A DNA stretch of 62,146 nucleotides, counting the filler, from Dugesia japonica (lineage: Eukaryota): the NCBI GenBank assembly GCA_001938525.1. It is 6 parts of 6 records of this genome, joined end to end, with 100 filler letters (N's around TTAATTAATTAA, not from the genome) between each part and the next. Parts side by side here need not be neighbours in the genome. Positions count along the whole stretch, not along the records: positions 20,208 to 28,853 come from MQRL01477328.1; 5 more parts are not named here. One strand, 5' to 3'. This document shows, piece after piece, positions 20,108 through 29,408 of the stretch. Below the pieces are notes generated by a model. It searched no databases, had not been told where the DNA came from, and worked only from the letters and a program-made list of their open reading frames with translations. Position 1 is the stretch's first letter; every line of letters starts with the position of its first letter. The translations under genes and the position numbers were made by a program.

Positions 20108-21693
20108 NNNNNNNNNNNNNNNNNNNNNNNNNNNNNNNNNNNNNNNNNNNNTTAATTAATTAANNNNNNNNNNNNNNNNNNNNNNNNNNNNNNNNNNNNN
20201 NNNNNNNGAACTTTTTGTATAAACGCAAAATTAAGATTTAAATTATAACTAGGTGTTGGTAAATTTTATTTTGTTTGTTTATATTTGCTTAACATTTATA
20301 TAATTCTTAATACAGCAAATAGCTTAATAGTGAAAATTATCAGACTTCATAGAAAATGATTATGCTAAATTTGTAATAATTTAAAAGAGATTTCGTAAAT
20401 AAACAACTTTTAAGAAATTTAATGAAACGAAAGTGTAAAGATTGACTAAATGAGAAGAGTTCAATAAATGTGGTGTAAAGGAATAAATCGATGAAAATAG
20501 ATGCAATGAGCGAATATGAAAAAGTTAATAAAGAATTAAATAATAAAATAAATACATGAAAACGGTTTCAAGAGGAAGAAGCTTATAATCTATTGAACAC
20601 ATAACAACTGAGCTTTCAGTAATTAACAAGTATTAGTTGAAAGATTATATAAATAATCAACAAAATAAAATGATAATAATGTAAGTATATAGAAATGATA
20701 TTATTGAAAATCAATGCAAACATTTATATTTATTTCAGTTAAAATAATCTAATGAGCAAATTAAAATTTTAGAAAAATAATAATATTGGTCGTATTGGGT
20801 AAATTTGTTGGGCTTTCAGCTTTCTTACTCGCTTTCTATCAATCTTGTTTTCCCCATCTTTTTATCGTTCGTTTAGTTCATCATCTAGGACTTTGATGCG
20901 CAAAGTGGGGGCCGCGTTAATTTCTTTGGTCGGGTCGCGAAAAAAAATAAATTTAATCATGTTTCAATAGTTAACGTTAAACAAACCAGAGTGGTCATAG
21001 AACATCCCACTGACTGAGGAATCAATAAAATATGATAGAAATTGAATTGAATTATCTTTTGTAAATATTTGTCATTAATTTTTATTAATAACCAGTAATA
21101 ATCATTCATTGTAAATTATTTTTTTTATTTTGGATAAATGGGTAGGTAAATGAAAAAAACTATCTATTGTCTTTACTACTCGTATTTTTATAAATAATTT
21201 TTTAAAATAAATTATTATTGATTTAAAAAAAGCTTCTTTTTAAAATTAATGTAAATAAATAATTAGTAAGCCATTTTAAATATATGTGAGAGTTCGTGTG
21301 AATCCTAATCCAGTTTCATGTTTTATAAAAGCATAGAGTATTTCTGATAATAATTAATACTTAATAATATAATAATAATAATAATGTTGGGTTTTTAGGA
21401 TTTGATGTTTTAGAATTCTATCGTTGAACTTATCGCTCTCGCTTTTAATAATTAATAATTAGTTTACACGTCTAGGGGCATACCTAAAAACCACAAGCAT
21501 TTATGTCACCTCTGTGACATGCCCCTTTCTTTCCACGGGTTCAGCGCGACTTTGTGGTATCGCGTCTTACTCATAAAATCTGTGAACCCGGTCTGTACTA
21601 ATCTAACATGCTCAGTAAAAATAAATCTAATGGATGCAACCAAATAAGTAGTACTATGGCACAAAAATCATTCCAATCCACACTCATTAACAT

Positions 21694-22040
21694 TTATTTT
21701 TTACAGGTGTACTTTGTTAACTCGGCATCCAAATCGTTTGTCGACTCCGTGATTGTGCTTGTTTCCTCTGGGGATCGATAGTGGAGCCACAACGTTCGCA
21801 GAGATACAAACATGGAGCTTTCTCTATCCGCGTACGTCTTGATGGCGTCGGCAATCAATCGGTTAGCGTGCTGAAGGGACAGTTCCTTCTCCTTGATTTG
21901 ATTCTACTTGGCCGCCGACTTCTGTACTTGTCCTTTCAGCCGCAAAATTTCATTTTTTAATCCCCTCCGCTCCTCCTTTCATCTCTGCTGGGTGGCTACG
22001 ACATCTTTCTTCTCCATGCGATCATCCGTAGACTTATTCA
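21694..22040 (-). pseudogene. Cassette exon: coiled-coil small protein, family A (split start A|TG; two premature stops)
   Basis: tttatcatttatag|TG AAT AAG TCT... gives (M)NKSTDDRMEKKDVVATQQR*KEERRGLKNEILRLKG...IADAIKTYADRESS...YTCKK*. The stop overlaps AATAAA. Confidence 0.65.
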
Positions 22041-22098
22041 CTATAAATGATAAAAATTAATATCATGAGTCGAAAATTGGATTATAATAGATTTAACT

Positions 22099-22168
22099 GA
22101 GATAAGATTATTTTAACCAACGAGATAAGATTATTTTCAACCAACGAGATAAGATTATTTAACCAAGT
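22099..22168. repeat. 3 x ~23-bp tandem repeat containing AGATAAG (GATA-type motif)
   Basis: gagataagattattttaaccaac, three near-identical copies. Confidence 0.8.
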
Positions 22169-22398
22169 TGGAAAATTAATAGAACGCGAGATAGACGCTC
22201 CGTACTGGCATTTTACATTGACACATTTATCCGCAAACAAAAATTTTTCTTTTAAAATTTCCGTAAACTTATTATTACCTCTACCGACAAAAGGAACGAA
22301 ATAAAAGCAAATTTTTTAACTACAGATGTGACATACAAATCACTCAAATTTAATAATTATTAAAATCACTAGATAGCAAAACGTTTCACACTCAACAT

Positions 22399-22816
22399 TT
22401 ATTGATCATTCTCCATCATCGACTCAACTTTTACAATGCGGAGCTGCTGAGGAATTGCCTGCTCGGCGACACTCTCAGATTTCAGCTCCAGNACCTGATC
22501 CTCCAGATATCCCAACTGAATCCGACTTTCCACTTGATGCCTTATGAATTGAGCCATACTCTCCTGAATTAAGTCCATTCCTCGACGGAGCCGCTCATTT
22601 TCCTGCTGACAGATCTGGAGAGTGGTCTGGGTATCGGCCAGTTGTTGCTTCACATTCCGAAATTTGGACACTAGTTACCCACCTTTTTGGAGCATCGTAT
22701 TTACTTCGTTGTTTTTCTAACAACTCCATCGTATTCCTCCAGGGAACCCAGAAAGTTCCCTCCTCTCAATCATTTGTGAGCACCAGCGGTATGTGAGGTT
22801 TGTAATACTCCGTCAT
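22399..22816 (-). pseudogene. Cassette exon: coiled-coil small protein, family A-like (one stop, one frameshift)
   Basis: ttattttatcacag|AAATATG gives MTEYYKPHIPLVLTND*EEG...KYDA. The frame then shifts into ORF 22399..22671 (...QENERLRRGMDLIQESMAQFIR...). The stop overlaps AATAAA. Confidence 0.6.
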
Positions 22817-24768
22817 ATTTCTGTGATAAAATAAGTAATAAAATTAAAAGATTTTAACAGCATTGTGAAGTGTAATTCCATGTAATAAAATTTGCATAAA
22901 ACAAAACGTCTCTTCGGCCTGTGGCCTATTAGTTCTGATTCCCCCGCCTCTATAGTACGAACCAGAGAAGATGTCCACCAAAGCAGCCATCTTTCCTAGT
23001 TCCTACTACTTCGAAGCTCTAACAAGAACTCCTTATCAGCTTGTTTTTTAAGAAATCCATAATCAAGTTGAAAAATTTATCATTAATCATGATCAATCTA
23101 TTATGGCTTGCTAATCAAATTTATTAAATAAAAAAAAATTTTAAGACATAACCCTATTCCATTTTAAAACTTAATATTTTTCGTAAAGTATAAAATTATA
23201 ATACAACCATTTTCAGAAAATTCCTAACTAAAATTATAGAATGGATTTAATAAACAAAATGAAAAGCTAAATCATTCATTTCTGAAACTTAATATTAAAG
23301 CATAAAATTATACAAATAAAAAAAATTTATTTTGTATTAGAAAATTCATAACTAAAATTATTGAATTACTTTACCGAATAAAATGAACATGAACATAAGG
23401 AAGCAACAATTTAATCAATTAAACCCCGATCATAAGCCTTATTAATCGAGCTCCTAACGTCAAACCATGTCCCACTCAAGAGGATCATACACTCTTGGAT
23501 GGTAAAAAAATTTGCTCTTGTATATCTGGGTTTTCCATAACTCAACTCATTCGCACTACTTAGCGACTTCTGCTGCAACTCATTCTTTTCAGTCAGATAA
23601 TATTGTTTTACTGTAACTTGCTCTCACTGATTTCATCACTTTTCCCGTCGGATTAATTCATTATATCTCCATCATAGAATCGTCTTCTCATTTTCAGGCA
23701 GTCTCATAAATTTGCTACAATTCCTTATCCATTCACATCTATTTCAATAATGATTACACAGTGGAATTTCGTTCTCGAACTTTGTGAATCTTCTCAACAT
23801 ATCAAATTTATTTCAATATGGTTAACATATTATCATTACGGTTTGCCAGTGTATCAAGCCGATTTCAGCTGGGTAGCACATTCTCAAAATCATCTAAATT
23901 TCTGGTTTCTATATATATTTAACTACTTAGGAGCACGATTGGATTTGTCGATGAGCATTCGAATCATAAGACAACATATATGAAAATGGTAATTTTAATC
24001 TCAATGAAATAAACAAAATTTACTTTCAATAATCGGCTGTTCTCTTTGATTGAAACAATTAAAATTCGAAAATTTAATGCACAATATCAGGGATTTGATT
24101 GAATAAAACAAAATTTCTTTTTTATGTCACTTGCTAGTAAAATTTTAATGAACAGTAAATCTAAATCTTTACTCGGTGCAAACAAGTTTTATTTCTTGCT
24201 TGCACCCTAACTTGTAACAGTTTATTAGCTCGCCAATCAGTTTCAAGTTGGACCCAATCCGAGTATATGATTGGTGTGGTTGGTGTGCTTCCCTCCTTAT
24301 GATTTTATGAAATTTTTGGTGCACACTAGTTTTTTGCACTAGAATTTATTTTGCAGTCACCTCGTATGACCTCTGGTAGTGACTGAGGAGAAGTCCTTGT
24401 CTAGCAGGAAATTATTCAGCTTATCTGCTGATGATTTTTGGTTTATTTTTCGTCAACTAGACAAGGACAGATGTCTGGACCAGCCATAATTATAATAATA
24501 ATTAATATCAAATGGATAATATTGTTGGGGTTCCACCTGAGTTGGAAAAGTGACTGGGGAAAAACAGCCCTCAGGGAAACCCTTTCAAGAATTTACCCTA
24601 CCGTCCTTATGGTAGGTTTTCAGTTTATTGCGGTTGACCTTACTCTTGATGGAAGGTGCTCACCAATAAACCTTTACTTTGGGTTCTATCTATTTTCCCT
24701 AATATTATTTTGTGAGAATTAAAACTCTTTAGTATTCTAATCAAAATATTTATTTAATAATAACATAA

Positions 24769-25151
24769 TTATAATAAATCCAAAGCTTCCGGATCTAGCC
24801 ATTGGTCGGGGGAAGTGGTGACGAAATTAAAAGCAGCAATGTCATCGTCGTCATCCCACTGGGTCGTATTTGGGTTTCCCAGTTGACGGGACAGATCGGA
24901 TATATACTGCTTGAGGAAGTCTATCTTACGCTGTAAGAGAAGTTTATTTTCCGCTTCCAACGCTTTAGTTTGGATTGCTAAATCGGATTGCTTTTTTATG
25001 ACAAGATCGAGTTTTTTAATTAGTCGATCGCGTTGGTCTAAGTGTTTGAGCAAAGCCTTATCAGCTTTTTTCTTCAAATGTCGTTCAACGAGGAGACGGT
25101 GTAAGAGGCGGTGACAACGCCTTAAACTAGTGGGGAATTGAATTCTAGGCA
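24769..25151 (-). CDS. Cassette exon: 127-aa basic coiled-coil protein with acidic tail (split start A|TG)
   Basis: ttcttatcatttcag|TG CCT AGA ATT. The ORF has no in-frame ATG at all. TAA is followed by AATAAA about 15 nt downstream. Confidence 0.7.
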
Positions 25152-25272
25152 CTGAAATGATAAGAATATTAGATGAGCATATGTTAAAAATAAGTCATTC
25201 GCTTATTAGTGAAAATCAACAAAACAAAATAATCAAGTAATGAATAGAATAGATTTTCATATTTTTACAAAA

Positions 25273-25640
25273 TTATGGATGAAGATTGTTTTTAGTTTGA
25301 GTACCCTTATTGCTCATAAGGGGTTCAAGATAGGACTTGTCCTTTAATAACAGAATGTCTTTCACCAGTTTATTTTCTCGGTCATGGCTGGACCGGATAA
25401 TCTCCGCGAATGATTCAATTTGAGCTTTCCAGGCTCGTTCTTGCTCTTGTACAAGACGCATTTCCTCACGAATGTGGGTACATTTAGTCTTGTACCTTTT
25501 TACTTTTGCATTCGCGATTGCTACATCGGCCTCCCAACGCCTTTTAGCTAAACGATATAAATTCCAAGACATTTCTATGTCTTCACTGTCTTCGCGGATT
25601 TTCTTAGTTGGGGCGGGTGGACGATTTAATGAGGAATGCA
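25273..25640 (-). CDS. Cassette exon: 122-aa coiled-coil protein, family A (split start A|TG)
   Basis: cctttattttcatgtag|TG CAT TCC TCA. Intact ORF with NLS-like PTKKIR and a heptad-rich core. Confidence 0.7.
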
Positions 25641-25786
25641 CTACATGAAAATAAAGGATAATTAATTCTTATTAAACTTTTAGACGAATATTTTATTAAG
25701 GTCCCAAAGAATTTATTATAATGAATTAAACTACGACAACACAAATTGAATGTCAAATTCACAAAGAGAAAACAACAATGAAATGA

Positions 25787-26191
25787 CTATAAGTCCTCCC
25801 TAGAAATATTTTCATCATTTCTGTAATTAAGAGCATTCCGCCCACTCCATAAGTTATTTTGTATAAAAGACGACAGCTGAGAGTAAGGGGGTAGCTGTGT
25901 CGTAGTGAGGCCGACTACTGTTGGGCTTTCTGACCAAACCCATTCAATACGCGGTGTGGAGGCAGACTCTAATGTGGGTGGTTGGCTTAAGCGATCTCTC
26001 CTTGGACCACGCCAATGATAGTAGGCGGCTCTCTCAGTCTCGTCCCAGTGACGATGATATTCGGCTTGCTCTGGTGACACGTTGGAGCGATCCACCAGTA
26101 CTCCCGCGTCTTGATTATATGGATTTTTAAACTTCTTAAAAGTTGTTAATCCAGATTGGGTATCTAAAGTTACGTCCCAAACATATTCCAT
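25787..26191 (-). CDS. Cassette exon: 134-aa unknown protein
   Basis: cattcatcttttatag|ACCATGG: acceptor immediately followed by an optimal Kozak ATG. Intact ORF; AATAAA about 70 nt after the stop. Confidence 0.7.
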   Translation of the reverse strand: MEYVWDVTLDTQSGLTTFKKFKNPYNQDAGVLVDRSNVSPEQAEYHRHWDETERAAYYHWRGPRRDRLSQPPTLESASTPRIEWVWSESPTVVGLTTTQLPPYSQLSSFIQNNLWSGRNALNYRNDENISREDL

Positions 26192-26348
26192 GGTCTATAA
26201 AAGATGAATGACACATCAAAATTAGGATGCATTTAATTACAATTAAGAATTGTGAATATACGATTAAATCAATTCAACCTAAAGAAAAATTGTTTTATTT
26301 GATAATGCACACAACCAAAAAGGAATATTCAAACGTCAAAAATGTCGT

Positions 26349-26534
26349 TCATTCATCCTCATCAAGATCGACTCGAGGTGTAAGAGGGAACATCTCGACG
26401 AAACACTGGAGATCCGTCTCGTCGGGATGTTCCACCTGACCCTTGGATAGATAATGTGCGATTAGCTGCTTAAGTCTGGCGGACCGCCGTTGGTGCTTGA
26501 TCCATCGGAGTATATGACGTAATTTGGCCGGCAT
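26349..26534 (-). CDS. Cassette exon: 61-aa basic-then-acidic peptide
   Basis: gttctccatttcag|TTAATG gives MPAKLRHILRWIKHQRRSARLKQLIAHYLSKG...DLDEDE*. AATAAA about 50 nt downstream. Confidence 0.6.
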   Translation of the reverse strand: MPAKLRHILRWIKHQRRSARLKQLIAHYLSKGQVEHPDETDLQCFVEMFPLTPRVDLDEDE

Positions 26535-26581
26535 TAACTGAAATGGAGAACATGATAACATTTTTTAGATTTTATATCCGT

Positions 26582-27277
26582 CTACAGCGGAATAGTAATA
26601 TTAATAACTGAAGATGAAATTGGAGTGAAGGGATAAAAGCTAGTGAATTGATCATATGACCGATGGGGATAACTTTCAATGCAACACGGGAATTCCTTAT
26701 CTGGCAGTAATAAAGATGATAATTACATGACTAGAAGTATACTCCATAGGACAACAATAATAAACTCATTGATCAAATTATTATTTAACATTAAGGGGGT
26801 TCTTACTAATAGTACTGTCCCCATTGTCGGCAGATTAGACGTATCAACTTTGACCTTGCGATGATTTTAAAGCTTGTCATATGTTCTATCGGCAATGATA
26901 GAGGCCAGAACCCTATCGATACTATTGTTCATAATAATAAGAATAGTACCAGTAATAATATTATTAATACTCCAGTTATTAATGATAAAGATAATCATCA
27001 TAGTCGGATACATTTAATGAGAACAAAATGGGTAATGCTAAATGGATGAATTTGAGTAATAATAAGAGCAATAAAAGCACTACTGATGATATCACTATCA
27101 ATACGGCCATAAAATTAATCGTAATAATAATGTCGACAATAAAAAAAACAAAGAAAAACCGTCTTCCTAACATCGAGCCCTTAAATGTTGAAAATTTGCT
27201 CACCAACTGGAACGATGATTTAACTCTATTCCGATGTACATTTCTCAGATAGTTTACACGGAATTGGAAATATTTAA
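26582..27277 (-). pseudogene. Cassette exon: decayed multi-hydrophobic (membrane-protein-like) region
   Basis: Acceptor aagttttctctcag at 27278. Several long hydrophobic runs in shifting frames (FFFVFFIVDIIITINFMAVLIVISSVVLLLLLLL; LITGVLIILLLVLFLLL; FIIVVLWSILLV). Confidence 0.35.
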
Positions 27278-28291
27278 CTGAGAGAAAACTTATTTAATTT
27301 ATTGTAATAATTAACTAAATATTAAACAACGATACTCTTGTCGTTCAAAAATTTCAGGGTTAACGATTCCATGCCAATTTGAAAATGTATGGTATACACA
27401 TCACTCTTGGAGACGCTCAAAGCCATCCTATCTTATGACTCATCGTTTATCAGATTTGCTCTTCATGCCTCTTATTATGCCTGTGTGTTATGCATTCACA
27501 TCAATCGACGCTAATCTGGTGTTCGATCAACTCTATAATTTTATTAATAGCTAATGATTGTAGTAACTCACTTATTCTTCATCGTGATATTTACTCACAT
27601 TCGATGGAATTTAAATAATCATTACTATGCTACTGGGTAAACAACTGGATAATTTGAAAACACAACGAGTGCAGTGGAAAGATTAGATTTCTCATACTTC
27701 TCTCATGTGGAATTTTGCAGATTTCAAGTACTTATTTGTATTCAATAAATTTTATCGAACTTTTATGAGTTGTAATTTTCTATTTTAATAATAGCATAAT
27801 TTCGATGTTTTTAAGCTCAGTATTAAGCTTATATATATATATATTTTTTCTTTCTTTCTTTATGTCGATATTTTTAGGTTACGATCGTAGATTGCATTAT
27901 TAATTATTAGTGGACATGGATTCGACATCTAGCTTAATTCTAATAAAACTAATTCTTAATTTAACATAAGGTAATCGTAACTGGAATCATTTTCGCAATA
28001 TGATCTTCCAGTTATTAGCCCGAGTAATTTTATATTAATGTGGATAGGCCTAATTTACATTTATTGAAATTACTTTTATAATCTCGTTATTTTATTGTTA
28101 AATAATACAATTATTTTTATCAACATAATCTATTGTAAATAATTTATTTTATTATTGTAAATCATAATTACATATATTTTATTATAAATCAGTTCACTTT
28201 ATTATGAAAAGCATAGTTAAATTCATCGAAATGATTTATTATAATTCTTTTTTGACAACAAGTTAACATTAAAATTAGAAATAATAATTAC

Positions 28292-28640
28292 TTATATGTA
28301 ATTCTGAAAAGAGAATTTTCAAAAGTTCTGCAACGGAAAATCTAGATTGTTGATAGATGGTTCGTAAATCTTCGACTCGCTCGGAAATTGACTTAATTTG
28401 GAAGATTAATGAAGTTTCCTTTCCTTGAACGGTGGTTTTGCTGAATTAAATAATTAACTAGGTAGAAATATTTGGTTTTAACTGACTCCTTGATGCAATA
28501 ATATTCGTGAATAGTGAGTGTGCACTTCTCGTTTTTCTAAAACTTTGGTTATTATAACGTTGGCTGAATTTAGTGGTTATAACTGTTGATTAAGGTTTGT
28601 TGCGTTTCGCAATTCAATAAAATACAAAATTTTGTGTCTG
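28292..28640 (-). other. Putative non-coding leader exon (AUG-free) ending at donor ATAA|gtaatt
   Basis: No ATG on the minus strand between the predicted TSS (~28640) and 28292. The first GTAA downstream of the TSS is at 28291, and the exon's last base is A. Confidence 0.6.
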
Positions 28641-28795
28641 ATTGACTTGAAAATTGGAGATCCTTTTATAGAATTTTCTGGACACCCCTACTATGTTCCG
28701 ATTTGTTGGTATTTTTGGACCAGCTCTTTTTCAATTTTATTGGTGCTAGCACCAATTTTCTAAAATTTTCTGTAAGTTTCGTTGCCATGATTGGC
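28636..28795 (-). promoter_or_regulatory. Pol II core promoter: TATAAAAGG (28670-28662), Inr-like TCAGAC ~30 nt downstream, CCAAT boxes at ~28741 and ~28792
   Basis: Canonical motifs at canonical spacing, oriented toward the ORF array. Confidence 0.65.
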
Positions 28796-29408
28796 AATTA
28801 TTTTTAGAGCAGCACCTGACATCGGTGTCTTTGTTTTATTTTTATTTTCTGGCNNNNNNNNNNNNNNNNNNNNNNNNNNNNNNNNNNNNNNNNNNNNTTA
28901 ATTAATTAANNNNNNNNNNNNNNNNNNNNNNNNNNNNNNNNNNNNNNNNNNNNAATATTTTCCTATAAAATGCATATGAATAATTAATAGTTTAATAATT
29001 GAGAATTTAATAAAACACAAAAATACCTATGAAAATTAATAAAAAACAATAAAGAACATAGACGAAATAAAATTACTAAATGTTTATTTCAATGAAATGT
29101 TTATGGATTTTTCTTCGATTTTATTGTTGTTCTTATCGATATTTAAGAAATTATTTTTTAGAAGTCTTCCAATACTTAACCGATATCCACAGGACGTAAT
29201 TCCTCTTGGATTAATAATGCAGGCACATCATTTCGACGGTTCAGTGCTTGCGACTTAATAGTCTCAGTAAAAATTCTGACTTAAACATCAGTAGAACATA
29301 CAATATACAAATTCTGCTAATCCTATATATCCTGTTGCAAGACATACTAAAATAAGACATATAGAAGTGATTGTTAATTTCAATCGATGACCCATTACCT
29401 TTTCAAAA

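What the first reader, a model, noticed from the sequence alone, without database searches (positions are those of the whole stretch)
21694..28795. Shared AUG-free leader plus tandem terminal exons, with start codons assembled by splicing (A|TG)
Seen on the minus strand: two CCAAT boxes and TATAAAAGG (28670), then ~350 nt with no ATG at all (my rough expectation from base composition is about five). The first GTAA donor is CATATAA|gtaatt at 28292/28291. Downstream lie GC-richer ORF islands, each opened by a pyrimidine tract plus AG and closed by its own stop, usually with AATAAA at or near it. Three start ag|TG in frame with the long ORF: 25640 (TG CAT TCC), 25151 (TG CCT AGA; this 127-aa ORF has no internal Met) and 22040 (TG AAT AAG). 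Joining the leader's last A creates ...ATA ATG, with A at -3. The other three carry an ATG 3-4 nt after the acceptor: 26537 (TTAATG), 26194 (ACCATGG) and 22820 (AAATATG). Inference: one promoter and one donor express six to ten small proteins by alternative acceptor and poly(A) choice, and the split codon makes translation depend on correct splicing. The logic recalls the adenovirus major-late unit and complex-retrovirus accessory genes. I know no description of it for a flatworm-like genome or element.
Basis: partly seen in the sequence, partly recalled or inferred. Interest (0 to 1): 0.93.

Follow-up and report, generated by a model that had tools for sequence, protein, structure and literature searches.

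The report
Tandem small genes lacking complete ATGs
A row of small protein-coding exons, several of which carry only the TG of their start codon directly after a splice acceptor (a feature also seen in a distant relative), so the ATG is probably completed by splicing, most likely from one ATG-free leader exon upstream; no RNA data were available to show this.

Summary
The anatomy is real. On the minus strand, a CCAAT/TATAAAAGG region is followed by a 519-nt ATG-free stretch. This stretch is richer in G+C and ends 22 nt past a ...ATATAA|GTAATT donor (28292). Downstream lie four intact GC-rich ORF islands of 62, 134, 122 and 127 codons. Each opens at a strong acceptor and has no plausible internal donor. 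Two further islands have interrupted reading frames.

Islands C and D start ag|TG in frame, and D has no Met codon at all.

The only relative found is a 512-nt metagenome contig, diverged to synonymous saturation. It keeps tttag|TGCATTCC for island C. Where the window has ACC ATG GAA for island B, it has ttcag|TG GAA, with an in-frame stop 12 nt upstream. So the TG is a start-codon remnant, and an A must come from an upstream exon.

A cis leader ending in A is the best candidate (about 0.5). No transcript evidence exists, and the organism is unidentified. Rivals are an operon resolved by a spliced leader and a phase-1 coding exon.

"Six to ten proteins" is overstated.

This would be a new variant of the shared-first-exon loci (unc-60, the cholinergic locus), not a new category.

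The parts
28739..28798 (-). Two CCAAT motifs (28794-28790 and 28743-28739) upstream of the TATA motif.
   Evidence: CCAAT occurs 12 times on this strand, so the motifs are weak evidence on their own.
28662..28670 (-). TATAAAAGG, the candidate TATA box.
   Evidence: TATAAA occurs 9 times and TATAAAAG twice on this strand of the piece.
28292..28640 (-). Predicted non-coding leader exon. The start is inferred about 30 nt after the TATA motif. The exon is ATG-free, has GC 0.32, and its last base is A.
   Evidence: The exon boundaries are inferred, not shown.
28269..28788 (-). ATG-free run of 519 nt.
28284..28294 (-). Proposed donor ATATAA|GTAATT, with the exon ending at 28292.
   Evidence: It is the only A|GTA site in the ATG-free stretch. 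It is weak by the generic consensus, with A at -1 and T at +5, and scored below 2.
26349..26537 (-). Island A. Acceptor ccatttcag|TTA ATG, 62 codons including its own ATG, stop TGA.
   Evidence: No relative was found. It holds one weak phase-1 GTC donor-like site.
25787..26194 (-). Island B. Acceptor cttttatag|ACC ATG G, 134 codons with its own ATG, stop TAG.
   Evidence: The homologue P0002/L001 is 51% identical over residues 1-77, with pN 0.34 and pS 0.79.
25273..25640 (-). Island C. Acceptor ttttcatgtag|TG CAT TCC, 121 codons after the TG, stop TAA. The first in-frame ATG is 23 codons further in.
   Evidence: The same ag|TGCATTCC start is present in L001.
24769..25151 (-). Island D. Acceptor atcatttcag|TG CCT AGA, 126 codons after the TG, no ATG codon, stop TAA.
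   Evidence: The structure model shows one long helix over residues 7-90, mean pLDDT 82.
22399..22820 (-). Island E, interrupted. The acceptor is followed by AAATATG, but the open pieces lie in more than one frame (at least one frame change). It also holds one N.
21694..22040 (-). Island F, interrupted. Acceptor atttatag|TG, one frame of 115 codons with 2 in-frame stops and no frame change.
23977..24487 (-). Second ATG-free run of 510 nt, between islands D and E. Its role is unknown.
   Evidence: A first-order Markov model expects 9.5 ATG. Two runs of at least 510 nt have P about 0.0005 in local shuffles.

Best explanation
The locus is one transcription unit of tandem terminal coding exons served by a shared leader.

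Transcription starts about 30 nt after TATAAAAGG (28670). The first exon, to 28292, is non-coding, contains no AUG and ends in A. Its donor is joined alternatively to the acceptor of one of several downstream single-exon coding islands, and each island ends with its own stop and 3' end.

- For islands C and D (and once F), the exon begins with UG. The junction therefore creates AUA AUG, with A at -3, which is the first and only usable start codon.
- For islands A and B, the exon carries its own AUG 3 nt after the acceptor.

The products are small proteins without known relatives. C and D are predicted coiled coils. B has a small conserved N-terminal domain.

What is shown:
- The anatomy.
- That the islands are coding: ORF statistics, and purifying selection on B.
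- That TG directly after the acceptor is conserved and stands where an ATG stands in the other species.

What is inferred:
- That the missing base is A.
- That it comes from this cis leader.
- That one promoter serves all islands.
For: 1. Split start.
- C and D open ag|TG in frame. D has no ATG in 141 stop-to-stop codons.
- In L001 the B homologue opens ttcag|TG GAA, where the window has ACC ATG GAA. It has an in-frame TAA 12 nt upstream and its first in-frame ATG at codon 38. The C homologue opens tttag|TGCATTCC.
- The two species are diverged to synonymous saturation (pS 0.79, pN 0.34).

2. Leader.
- The ATG-free run is 519 nt. ATG counts are 0 in the 369 nt before the donor and 10 and 8 in the two 369-nt blocks after it. 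GC drops from 0.33 to 0.18 at about 28300.
- The only A|GTA donor in that stretch is at 28292.

3. Terminal exons.
- No donor candidate lies inside B, C or D.
- The acceptors are among the best 13 of 474 AG sites.
- In-frame stops lie 3-46 nt upstream of each acceptor.

4. Precedent.
- unc-60 and the cholinergic locus share one first exon between separate downstream exon sets (PMC3469465).
- A natural split start codon is known in VAMP1 (bioRxiv 10.64898/2026.06.30.735536).
Against: - No transcript, junction read or cDNA could be reached, and no second copy of the leader exists for comparison. L001 has only 75 nt upstream of B.
- The donor is weak by the generic consensus, with A at -1 and T at +5 (below the threshold).
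- With dinucleotide composition taken into account, the ATG-free leader is only moderately unlikely (expected 4.2 ATG).
- Short spacers (122-155 nt), AATAAA before the next acceptor, and start codons within -1 to +4 nt of the acceptor are also the textbook look of an operon resolved by trans-splicing.
- A TATAAAA lies about 40 nt upstream of island A's acceptor.
- A second, unexplained ATG-free run lies downstream of D.
Confidence: 0.5

Rival explanations
1. The locus is a polycistronic unit (operon). Islands A-D are separate cistrons on one precursor. Each upstream cistron is cleaved and polyadenylated, and each downstream one receives a trans-spliced leader (SL) at its acceptor. The SL's last base completes the start codon.
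For: - The cistrons lie on the same strand, with spacers of 155, 147 and 122 nt, and 104 nt in L001.
- AATAAA lies 50-90 nt after the stops of A and B, and directly after the stop of B in L001.
- The start codon lies within -1 to +4 nt of every acceptor.
- Candidate flatworm operons are defined by same-strand gaps of at most 300 bp and are resolved by SL trans-splicing (PMC12582326).
Against: - All reported flatworm SLs end in AUG (PMC12582326, PMC9851317). AUG|UG puts that AUG out of frame, giving 5 codons in C and 10 in D (skip-0 frames).
- From my own memory, not checked here, the well-known SLs of other phyla end in G. That would give GUG, a poor start codon, whereas the orthologous position of B is a true ATG.
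- No SL is known to me that ends in A.
- No AATAAA follows island C.
- No SL RNA gene matched in the Rfam scan of the piece.
Confidence: 0.2
2. The ag|TG exons are phase-1 coding exons that follow a coding upstream exon. For example, the first 32 codons of island A could be joined through the AAGG|GTCAGG site at 26440, so that the split codon is GTG (Val) and not a start codon.
For: The only donor-like site inside any island lies in A and is in phase 1, which matches the phase of C and D.
Against: - The site has C at +3, which is rare in donors.
- Nothing in this model explains why TG follows the acceptor in four different cistrons (C, D, F, and B of L001). The chance is about (1/16)^4 if the split codon were free.
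- Nothing explains why that TG aligns with the TG of a genuine initiator ATG in the other species.
- Window B cannot be joined in phase 1, because that frame closes after 18 codons.
Confidence: 0.08
3. The islands are independent small genes or decaying pseudogenes. They would be transcribed from their own spacers and translated from GUG or internal AUG codons, or not translated at all. The ag|TG pattern would then be chance.
For: - E and F are interrupted.
- No annotated relatives were found in about 15 billion proteins.
- The spacers are AT-rich.
Against: - B is under purifying selection.
- The B-then-C order and the ag|TG of C are conserved across saturated divergence.
- Three ORFs of at least 131 codons never arose in 1000 shuffles.
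- D has no AUG at all.
- The genomic GTG of D has U at -3, a poor context for initiation.
Confidence: 0.07

Closest known systems
C. elegans unc-60 locus (UNC-60A / UNC-60B)
   Same: One common first exon is joined alternatively to separate series of downstream exons. Each series has its own 3' end, and the upstream series lies in the intron of the downstream one (PMC3469465). From my own knowledge, the shared exon contributes only the initiator codon.
   Different: - unc-60 has two products, each with several exons, and they are paralogues.
- Here there are at least four single-exon products without mutual similarity.
- Here the shared exon would give only the A of the codon.
- Nothing is shown at the RNA level here.
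Cholinergic gene locus (VAChT / ChAT)
   Same: A shared non-coding first exon serves two different proteins, and one gene lies within the first intron of the other (PMC3469465).
   Different: It has two genes with complete ATGs of their own. It has no split start codon.
Adenovirus major late transcription unit and the accessory mRNAs of complex retroviruses
   Same: One promoter and one leader donor are used with many alternative acceptors, and in the adenovirus unit with several poly(A) sites.
   Different: - Those are viral genomes, and their ORFs carry their own AUGs.
- No tool result here suggests viral origin.
Flatworm spliced leader whose 3'-terminal AUG serves as initiator (Cheng et al. 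2006, as cited in PMC9851317 and PMC12582326)
   Same: The start codon is not encoded with the ORF. It arrives with a leader through splicing, so translation depends on splicing.
   Different: - There the whole AUG comes from a trans-spliced SL.
- Here the exon keeps UG, and a complete AUG in front of it would be out of frame.
SL2-type operons of nematodes and candidate operons of flatworms
   Same: Cistrons lie on the same strand, spacers are about 100-150 nt, a poly(A) signal lies upstream of the next acceptor, and the start codon lies next to the acceptor.
   Different: The downstream cistrons lack a complete start codon. No SL evidence was found.
Single genes with an intron inside the start codon (for example vertebrate VAMP1, AT|G)
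   Same: The start codon is split between exon 1 and exon 2 (bioRxiv 10.64898/2026.06.30.735536).
   Different: That case is one gene with one acceptor. Here several unrelated cistrons would share the donor base.

Membership tests
Shared-first-exon, alternative-terminal-exon locus (unc-60 type) | A single upstream exon with a functional donor. | tested here: inconclusive
   An ATG-free segment, richer in G+C, ends at A|GTAATT. The donor is weak by the generic consensus. No RNA data were available.
Shared-first-exon, alternative-terminal-exon locus (unc-60 type) | Two or more downstream coding units, each with its own acceptor, stop and 3' end. | tested here: met
   Islands A-D have strong acceptors, no internal donors and their own stops. 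AATAAA follows A, B and D.
Shared-first-exon, alternative-terminal-exon locus (unc-60 type) | mRNAs that join the common exon to each unit. | not testable with these tools
   The window's proteins are absent from the assembly collection, so no transcript contigs could be reached.
Operon resolved by spliced-leader trans-splicing | Cistrons on the same strand separated by short spacers (at most 300 bp). | tested here: met
   Spacers are 155, 147 and 122 nt, and 104 nt in L001.
Operon resolved by spliced-leader trans-splicing | An SL is added at the acceptor of downstream cistrons. | not testable with these tools
   No RNA reads were available. No SL RNA family matched in the piece.
Flatworm SL-AUG initiator genes | The ORF is in frame with a complete AUG placed directly before the first exon base. 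| tested here: not met
   The frame that starts at the first exon base closes after 4 codons in C and 9 codons in D. The long ORF needs only one added base.
Split start codon | The genomic ORF lacks an ATG and begins with TG, or G, directly after an acceptor. | tested here: met
   This holds for C and D in the window and for B and C in L001.
Split start codon | The upstream exon ends with the missing base or bases. | tested here: inconclusive
   The best leader donor ends in A, but its use is not shown.
Virus or virus-like element | Recognisable viral proteins, or repeats that bound an element. | tested here: not met
   No Pfam match reached its curated cut-off. No PDB sequence hit was found. 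No long terminal or inverted repeats bound the unit.

The most novel reading that the evidence does not exclude
A whole set of unrelated small genes lack a genomic start codon and depend on one dedicated leader to donate the A of AUG. The leader could be cis-spliced, or an undescribed spliced leader that ends in A. Splicing would then act as an obligatory licence for translation. The arrangement has been kept between species that have diverged to synonymous saturation, and individual genes switch over evolutionary time between an own ATG and a split one.
Probability: 0.4. Interest if true: 0.75.

Novelty: new variant of a known kind. Interest (0 to 1): 0.6.

Why it matters
If the leader model holds, this is a cellular locus in which several unrelated proteins share one promoter, one donor and even one nucleotide of their start codon.

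- Unspliced or mis-spliced RNA could not be translated into C or D.
- The choice of acceptor alone would decide which protein is made.
- Gene finders that require a genomic ATG would miss such genes. That may be why none of these proteins is in the public collections.

It also gives a concrete test for RNA data: junction reads from one donor to four or more acceptors.

Tried and rejected
Searches that found nothing useful:
- Pfam on eight ORFs gave only sub-threshold coiled-coil noise.
- The search for homologous proteins with B, D and P0002 returned only P0002 itself.
- An exact look-up of seven window ORFs found none in the collection. References translate the GTG-led ORFs with V, so the Met-initial forms of C and D could not be looked up without typing them. 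That step was left out.
- In the representative search with B, three of the four hits were long repeat proteins. One of them (P0004) was read and is a repeat protein that matches a short Ser/Thr/Pro-rich stretch. All three were rejected as chance.
- Two scans of JGI metagenomes, one with protein patterns and one with a degenerate KNPYNxDAG pattern, gave motif-only hits. tblastn found no relatives among them.
- PDB sequence searches with B, C and D found nothing.
- The Rfam scan gave only a sub-threshold miRNA-like palindrome.
- There are no tRNA genes.

Analyses that led nowhere:
- The islands show no paralogy with each other.
- E and F do not align at the DNA level.
- The two ATG-free runs share no similarity.
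- The structure model of B was too poor to search with (pLDDT 45). D is a single helix, so a fold search would be meaningless.
- The bacterial promoter and terminator scan is irrelevant here.

Models rejected:
- A conventional multi-exon gene made of the islands, because B-D have no donors and each has its own stop.
- An SL AUG in frame with the ORF.


Full report
**1. The observation**

- CCAAT lies at 28794 and 28743, and TATAAAAGG at 28670.
- There is no ATG from 28788 to 28269, a run of 519 nt.
- Mononucleotide shuffles expect 5.4 ATG in the 389 nt before the donor (P about 0.002). A first-order Markov model expects 4.2 in the run, so with dinucleotide composition the depletion is moderate (P about 0.015).
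- The boundary is sharp. There are 0 ATG in the 369 nt before 28292, then 10 and 8 in the next two 369-nt blocks. GC falls from 0.33 to 0.18 at the same place.
- Among all GT sites preceded by A in that stretch, only ATATAA|GTAATT (28292/28291) begins GTA. It is weak by a generic donor matrix, with A at -1 and T at +5.

**2. The islands**

- Island GC is 0.41-0.50, against 0.21-0.31 in the spacers.
- Of 474 AG dinucleotides on this strand, 13 pass a strict filter: at least 70% pyrimidine at -22..-4, no AG in the last 15 nt, and a pyrimidine at -3. Four of those 13 are island acceptors (26537, 25640, 25151, 22820). Acceptors 26194 and 22040 are at the 91st percentile.
- The nearest in-frame stop lies 3-46 nt upstream of each acceptor. 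No donor candidate lies inside B, C or D.
- Three stop-to-stop ORFs of 131-141 codons on one strand never arose in 1000 shuffles that keep composition in 150-nt blocks.

The intact islands are:

| Island | Coordinates | Opening | Length |
|---|---|---|---|
| A | 26537-26349 | TTA ATG | 62 codons |
| B | 26194-25787 | ACC ATG G | 134 codons |
| C | 25640-25273 | ag\|TG CAT TCC | 121 codons after the TG |
| D | 25151-24769 | ag\|TG CCT AGA | 126 codons after the TG, no ATG codon |

Two downstream islands are interrupted.
- F (22040-21694) is one frame of 115 codons from ag|TG, with 2 in-frame stops.
- E (22820-22399) has its open pieces in more than one frame, and it contains an N.
- The ag|TG-like site in front of E's 90-codon ORF has no pyrimidine tract and is probably chance.

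The ORF after 27277 is hydrophobic and low-complexity, and it does not fit the model.

AATAAA occurs 3.7 times per kb on this strand. Its presence after A, B and D, and overlapping the stops of E and F, is therefore weak evidence. None follows C.

**3. What the proteins are**

- No Pfam family reaches its cut-off.
- No PDB sequence relative was found.
- The islands show no similarity to each other.
- D is modelled as one long helix (residues 7-90, mean pLDDT 82) with an acidic, disordered tail. C, E and F also give only weak coiled-coil-type matches.
- The model of B is poor (pLDDT 45), with a small strand-plus-helix N-terminal part.

Function is unknown beyond 'small, probably intracellular coiled-coil proteins'.

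**4. The one relative, and why it matters**

A full scan of 1.84 billion representative proteins with B gave a single true hit, P0002. It is 94 aa, 51% identical over B residues 1-77, with E = 1.7e-15. It lies on a 512-nt metagenome contig, L001 (ENA ERZ27272684).

Over 76 aligned codons, the differences by codon position are 33/23/42. pN is 0.34 and pS is 0.79, which is saturated. B is therefore under purifying selection and the two species are far apart. The spacers do not align.

In L001:
- The B homologue opens tttttcag|TG GAA AAT, where the window has ACC ATG GAA TAT.
- An in-frame TAA lies 12 nt upstream, and the first in-frame ATG is at codon 38. Residues 1-37 are nevertheless the best-conserved part.
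- After the stop comes AATAAA, and 104 nt after the stop comes cattttag|TGCATTCC. This encodes (M)HSTTRYPTAPTKK, against the window's (M)HSSLNRPPAPTKK.

The gene order B then C, the acceptor, and the exon-initial TG of C are all conserved. B switches between an own ATG and a split one. In total, four different cistrons (C, D, F, and B of L001) have TG directly after the acceptor. If the split codon were arbitrary, the chance would be about (1/16)^4.

I conclude that the TG is a start-codon remnant and that the missing base is most simply A.

**5. Who gives the A**

This is consistent, but not shown.

*(b) Spliced leader in an operon.* The spacing (122-155 nt), the poly(A) signals and the acceptor-adjacent start codons look like an operon.
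- All reported flatworm SLs end in AUG (PMC12582326; PMC9851317). An AUG placed before UG is out of frame, and that frame closes after 4 codons (C) and 9 codons (D).
- Leaders ending in G would give GUG.
- An SL ending in A is unknown to me, but it cannot be excluded because the organism is unidentified.

*(c) A coding upstream exon in phase 1.* The only donor-like site in an island is a GTC site in A, in phase 1. This would make the codon GTG (Val). It explains neither the recurrent TG nor its alignment with an initiator ATG.

*(d) Independent genes or pseudogenes.* This is contradicted by the conservation and by D having no AUG.

I rate (a) at 0.5, (b) at 0.2, (c) at 0.08 and (d) at 0.07. 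The more general claim, that the start codon is assembled by splicing, I rate at about 0.75.

**6. Comparison with known systems**

- The closest cellular precedents are unc-60 and the cholinergic locus. In both, one first exon is joined to separate downstream exon sets (PMC3469465).
- Single genes with an intron in the start codon are also known, such as VAMP1 with AT|G (bioRxiv 10.64898/2026.06.30.735536).
- Reporters have been engineered with a split ATG to make translation depend on splicing (PMC3668367).
- The flatworm SL-AUG is the trans-splicing counterpart. Its defining frame relation was tested here and is not met.
- The adenovirus and retrovirus analogies concern logic only. No tool suggested viral origin, and no viral sequence was fetched or compared.

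This would be a new variant of a known kind. At least four unrelated single-exon cistrons would share one donor, and for some of them one nucleotide of the AUG.

**7. Limits**

- The organism was not identified. The window's proteins are absent from the public protein and assembly collections.
- Only one short relative exists, and two JGI metagenome scans found nothing.
- No RNA evidence could be reached.

Noticed in passing
window 23977-24487 (minus strand): A second ATG-free run of 510 nt lies between islands D and E. A first-order Markov model expects 9.5 ATG, so it is more depleted than the leader. It has no similarity to the leader. It holds A|GTAAA donor-like sites at 24172 and 24023, but no TATAAA lies upstream. 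It could be a second leader or a repeat. This is unresolved.
   Followed up: partly
window 28284-28331 (minus strand): Two acceptor-like sites (ccgttgcag| at 28331 and ctcttttcag| at 28303) lie just upstream of the proposed donor. That leaves only 12 nt (AATTACATATAA) between the strong acceptor and the donor. This 12 nt and the donor form a small palindrome (AATTAC...GTAATT). It could be a micro-exon, a trans-splice acceptor or chance.
   Followed up: partly
window 26570-26576 (minus strand): TATAAAA lies about 40 nt upstream of island A's acceptor. It is one of only nine TATAAA on this strand. Island A might have its own promoter.
   Followed up: no
window 26979-27293 (minus strand): A 104-codon open frame holds a very hydrophobic Leu/Ile/Val-rich stretch that looks like a signal peptide or membrane span. 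It lies in the proposed first intron. A GTGAGC donor-like site lies at 27203. It was not placed in any model.
   Followed up: no
window 22111-22158: A 24-nt unit is repeated in tandem (96% identical) in the spacer between islands E and F.
   Followed up: no
window 22385-22405 and 21680-21700 (minus strand): The stops of islands E and F both sit in AATAAATGTT..GAGTGTG. The poly(A) signal therefore overlaps the stop codon in both. Otherwise the two islands do not align.
   Followed up: partly
window 26385-26435: A weak, sub-threshold match to a miRNA family on both strands (25 bits against a gathering score of 90) lies inside island A's ORF. It reflects a local palindrome and is probably chance.
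   Followed up: no
window 27571 and 27598 (minus strand): The two best consensus donors of the upstream region (GTGAGT) lie in the proposed first intron. One is preceded by ATG AAG AAT AA. Further small exons between the leader and island A cannot be excluded.
   Followed up: no
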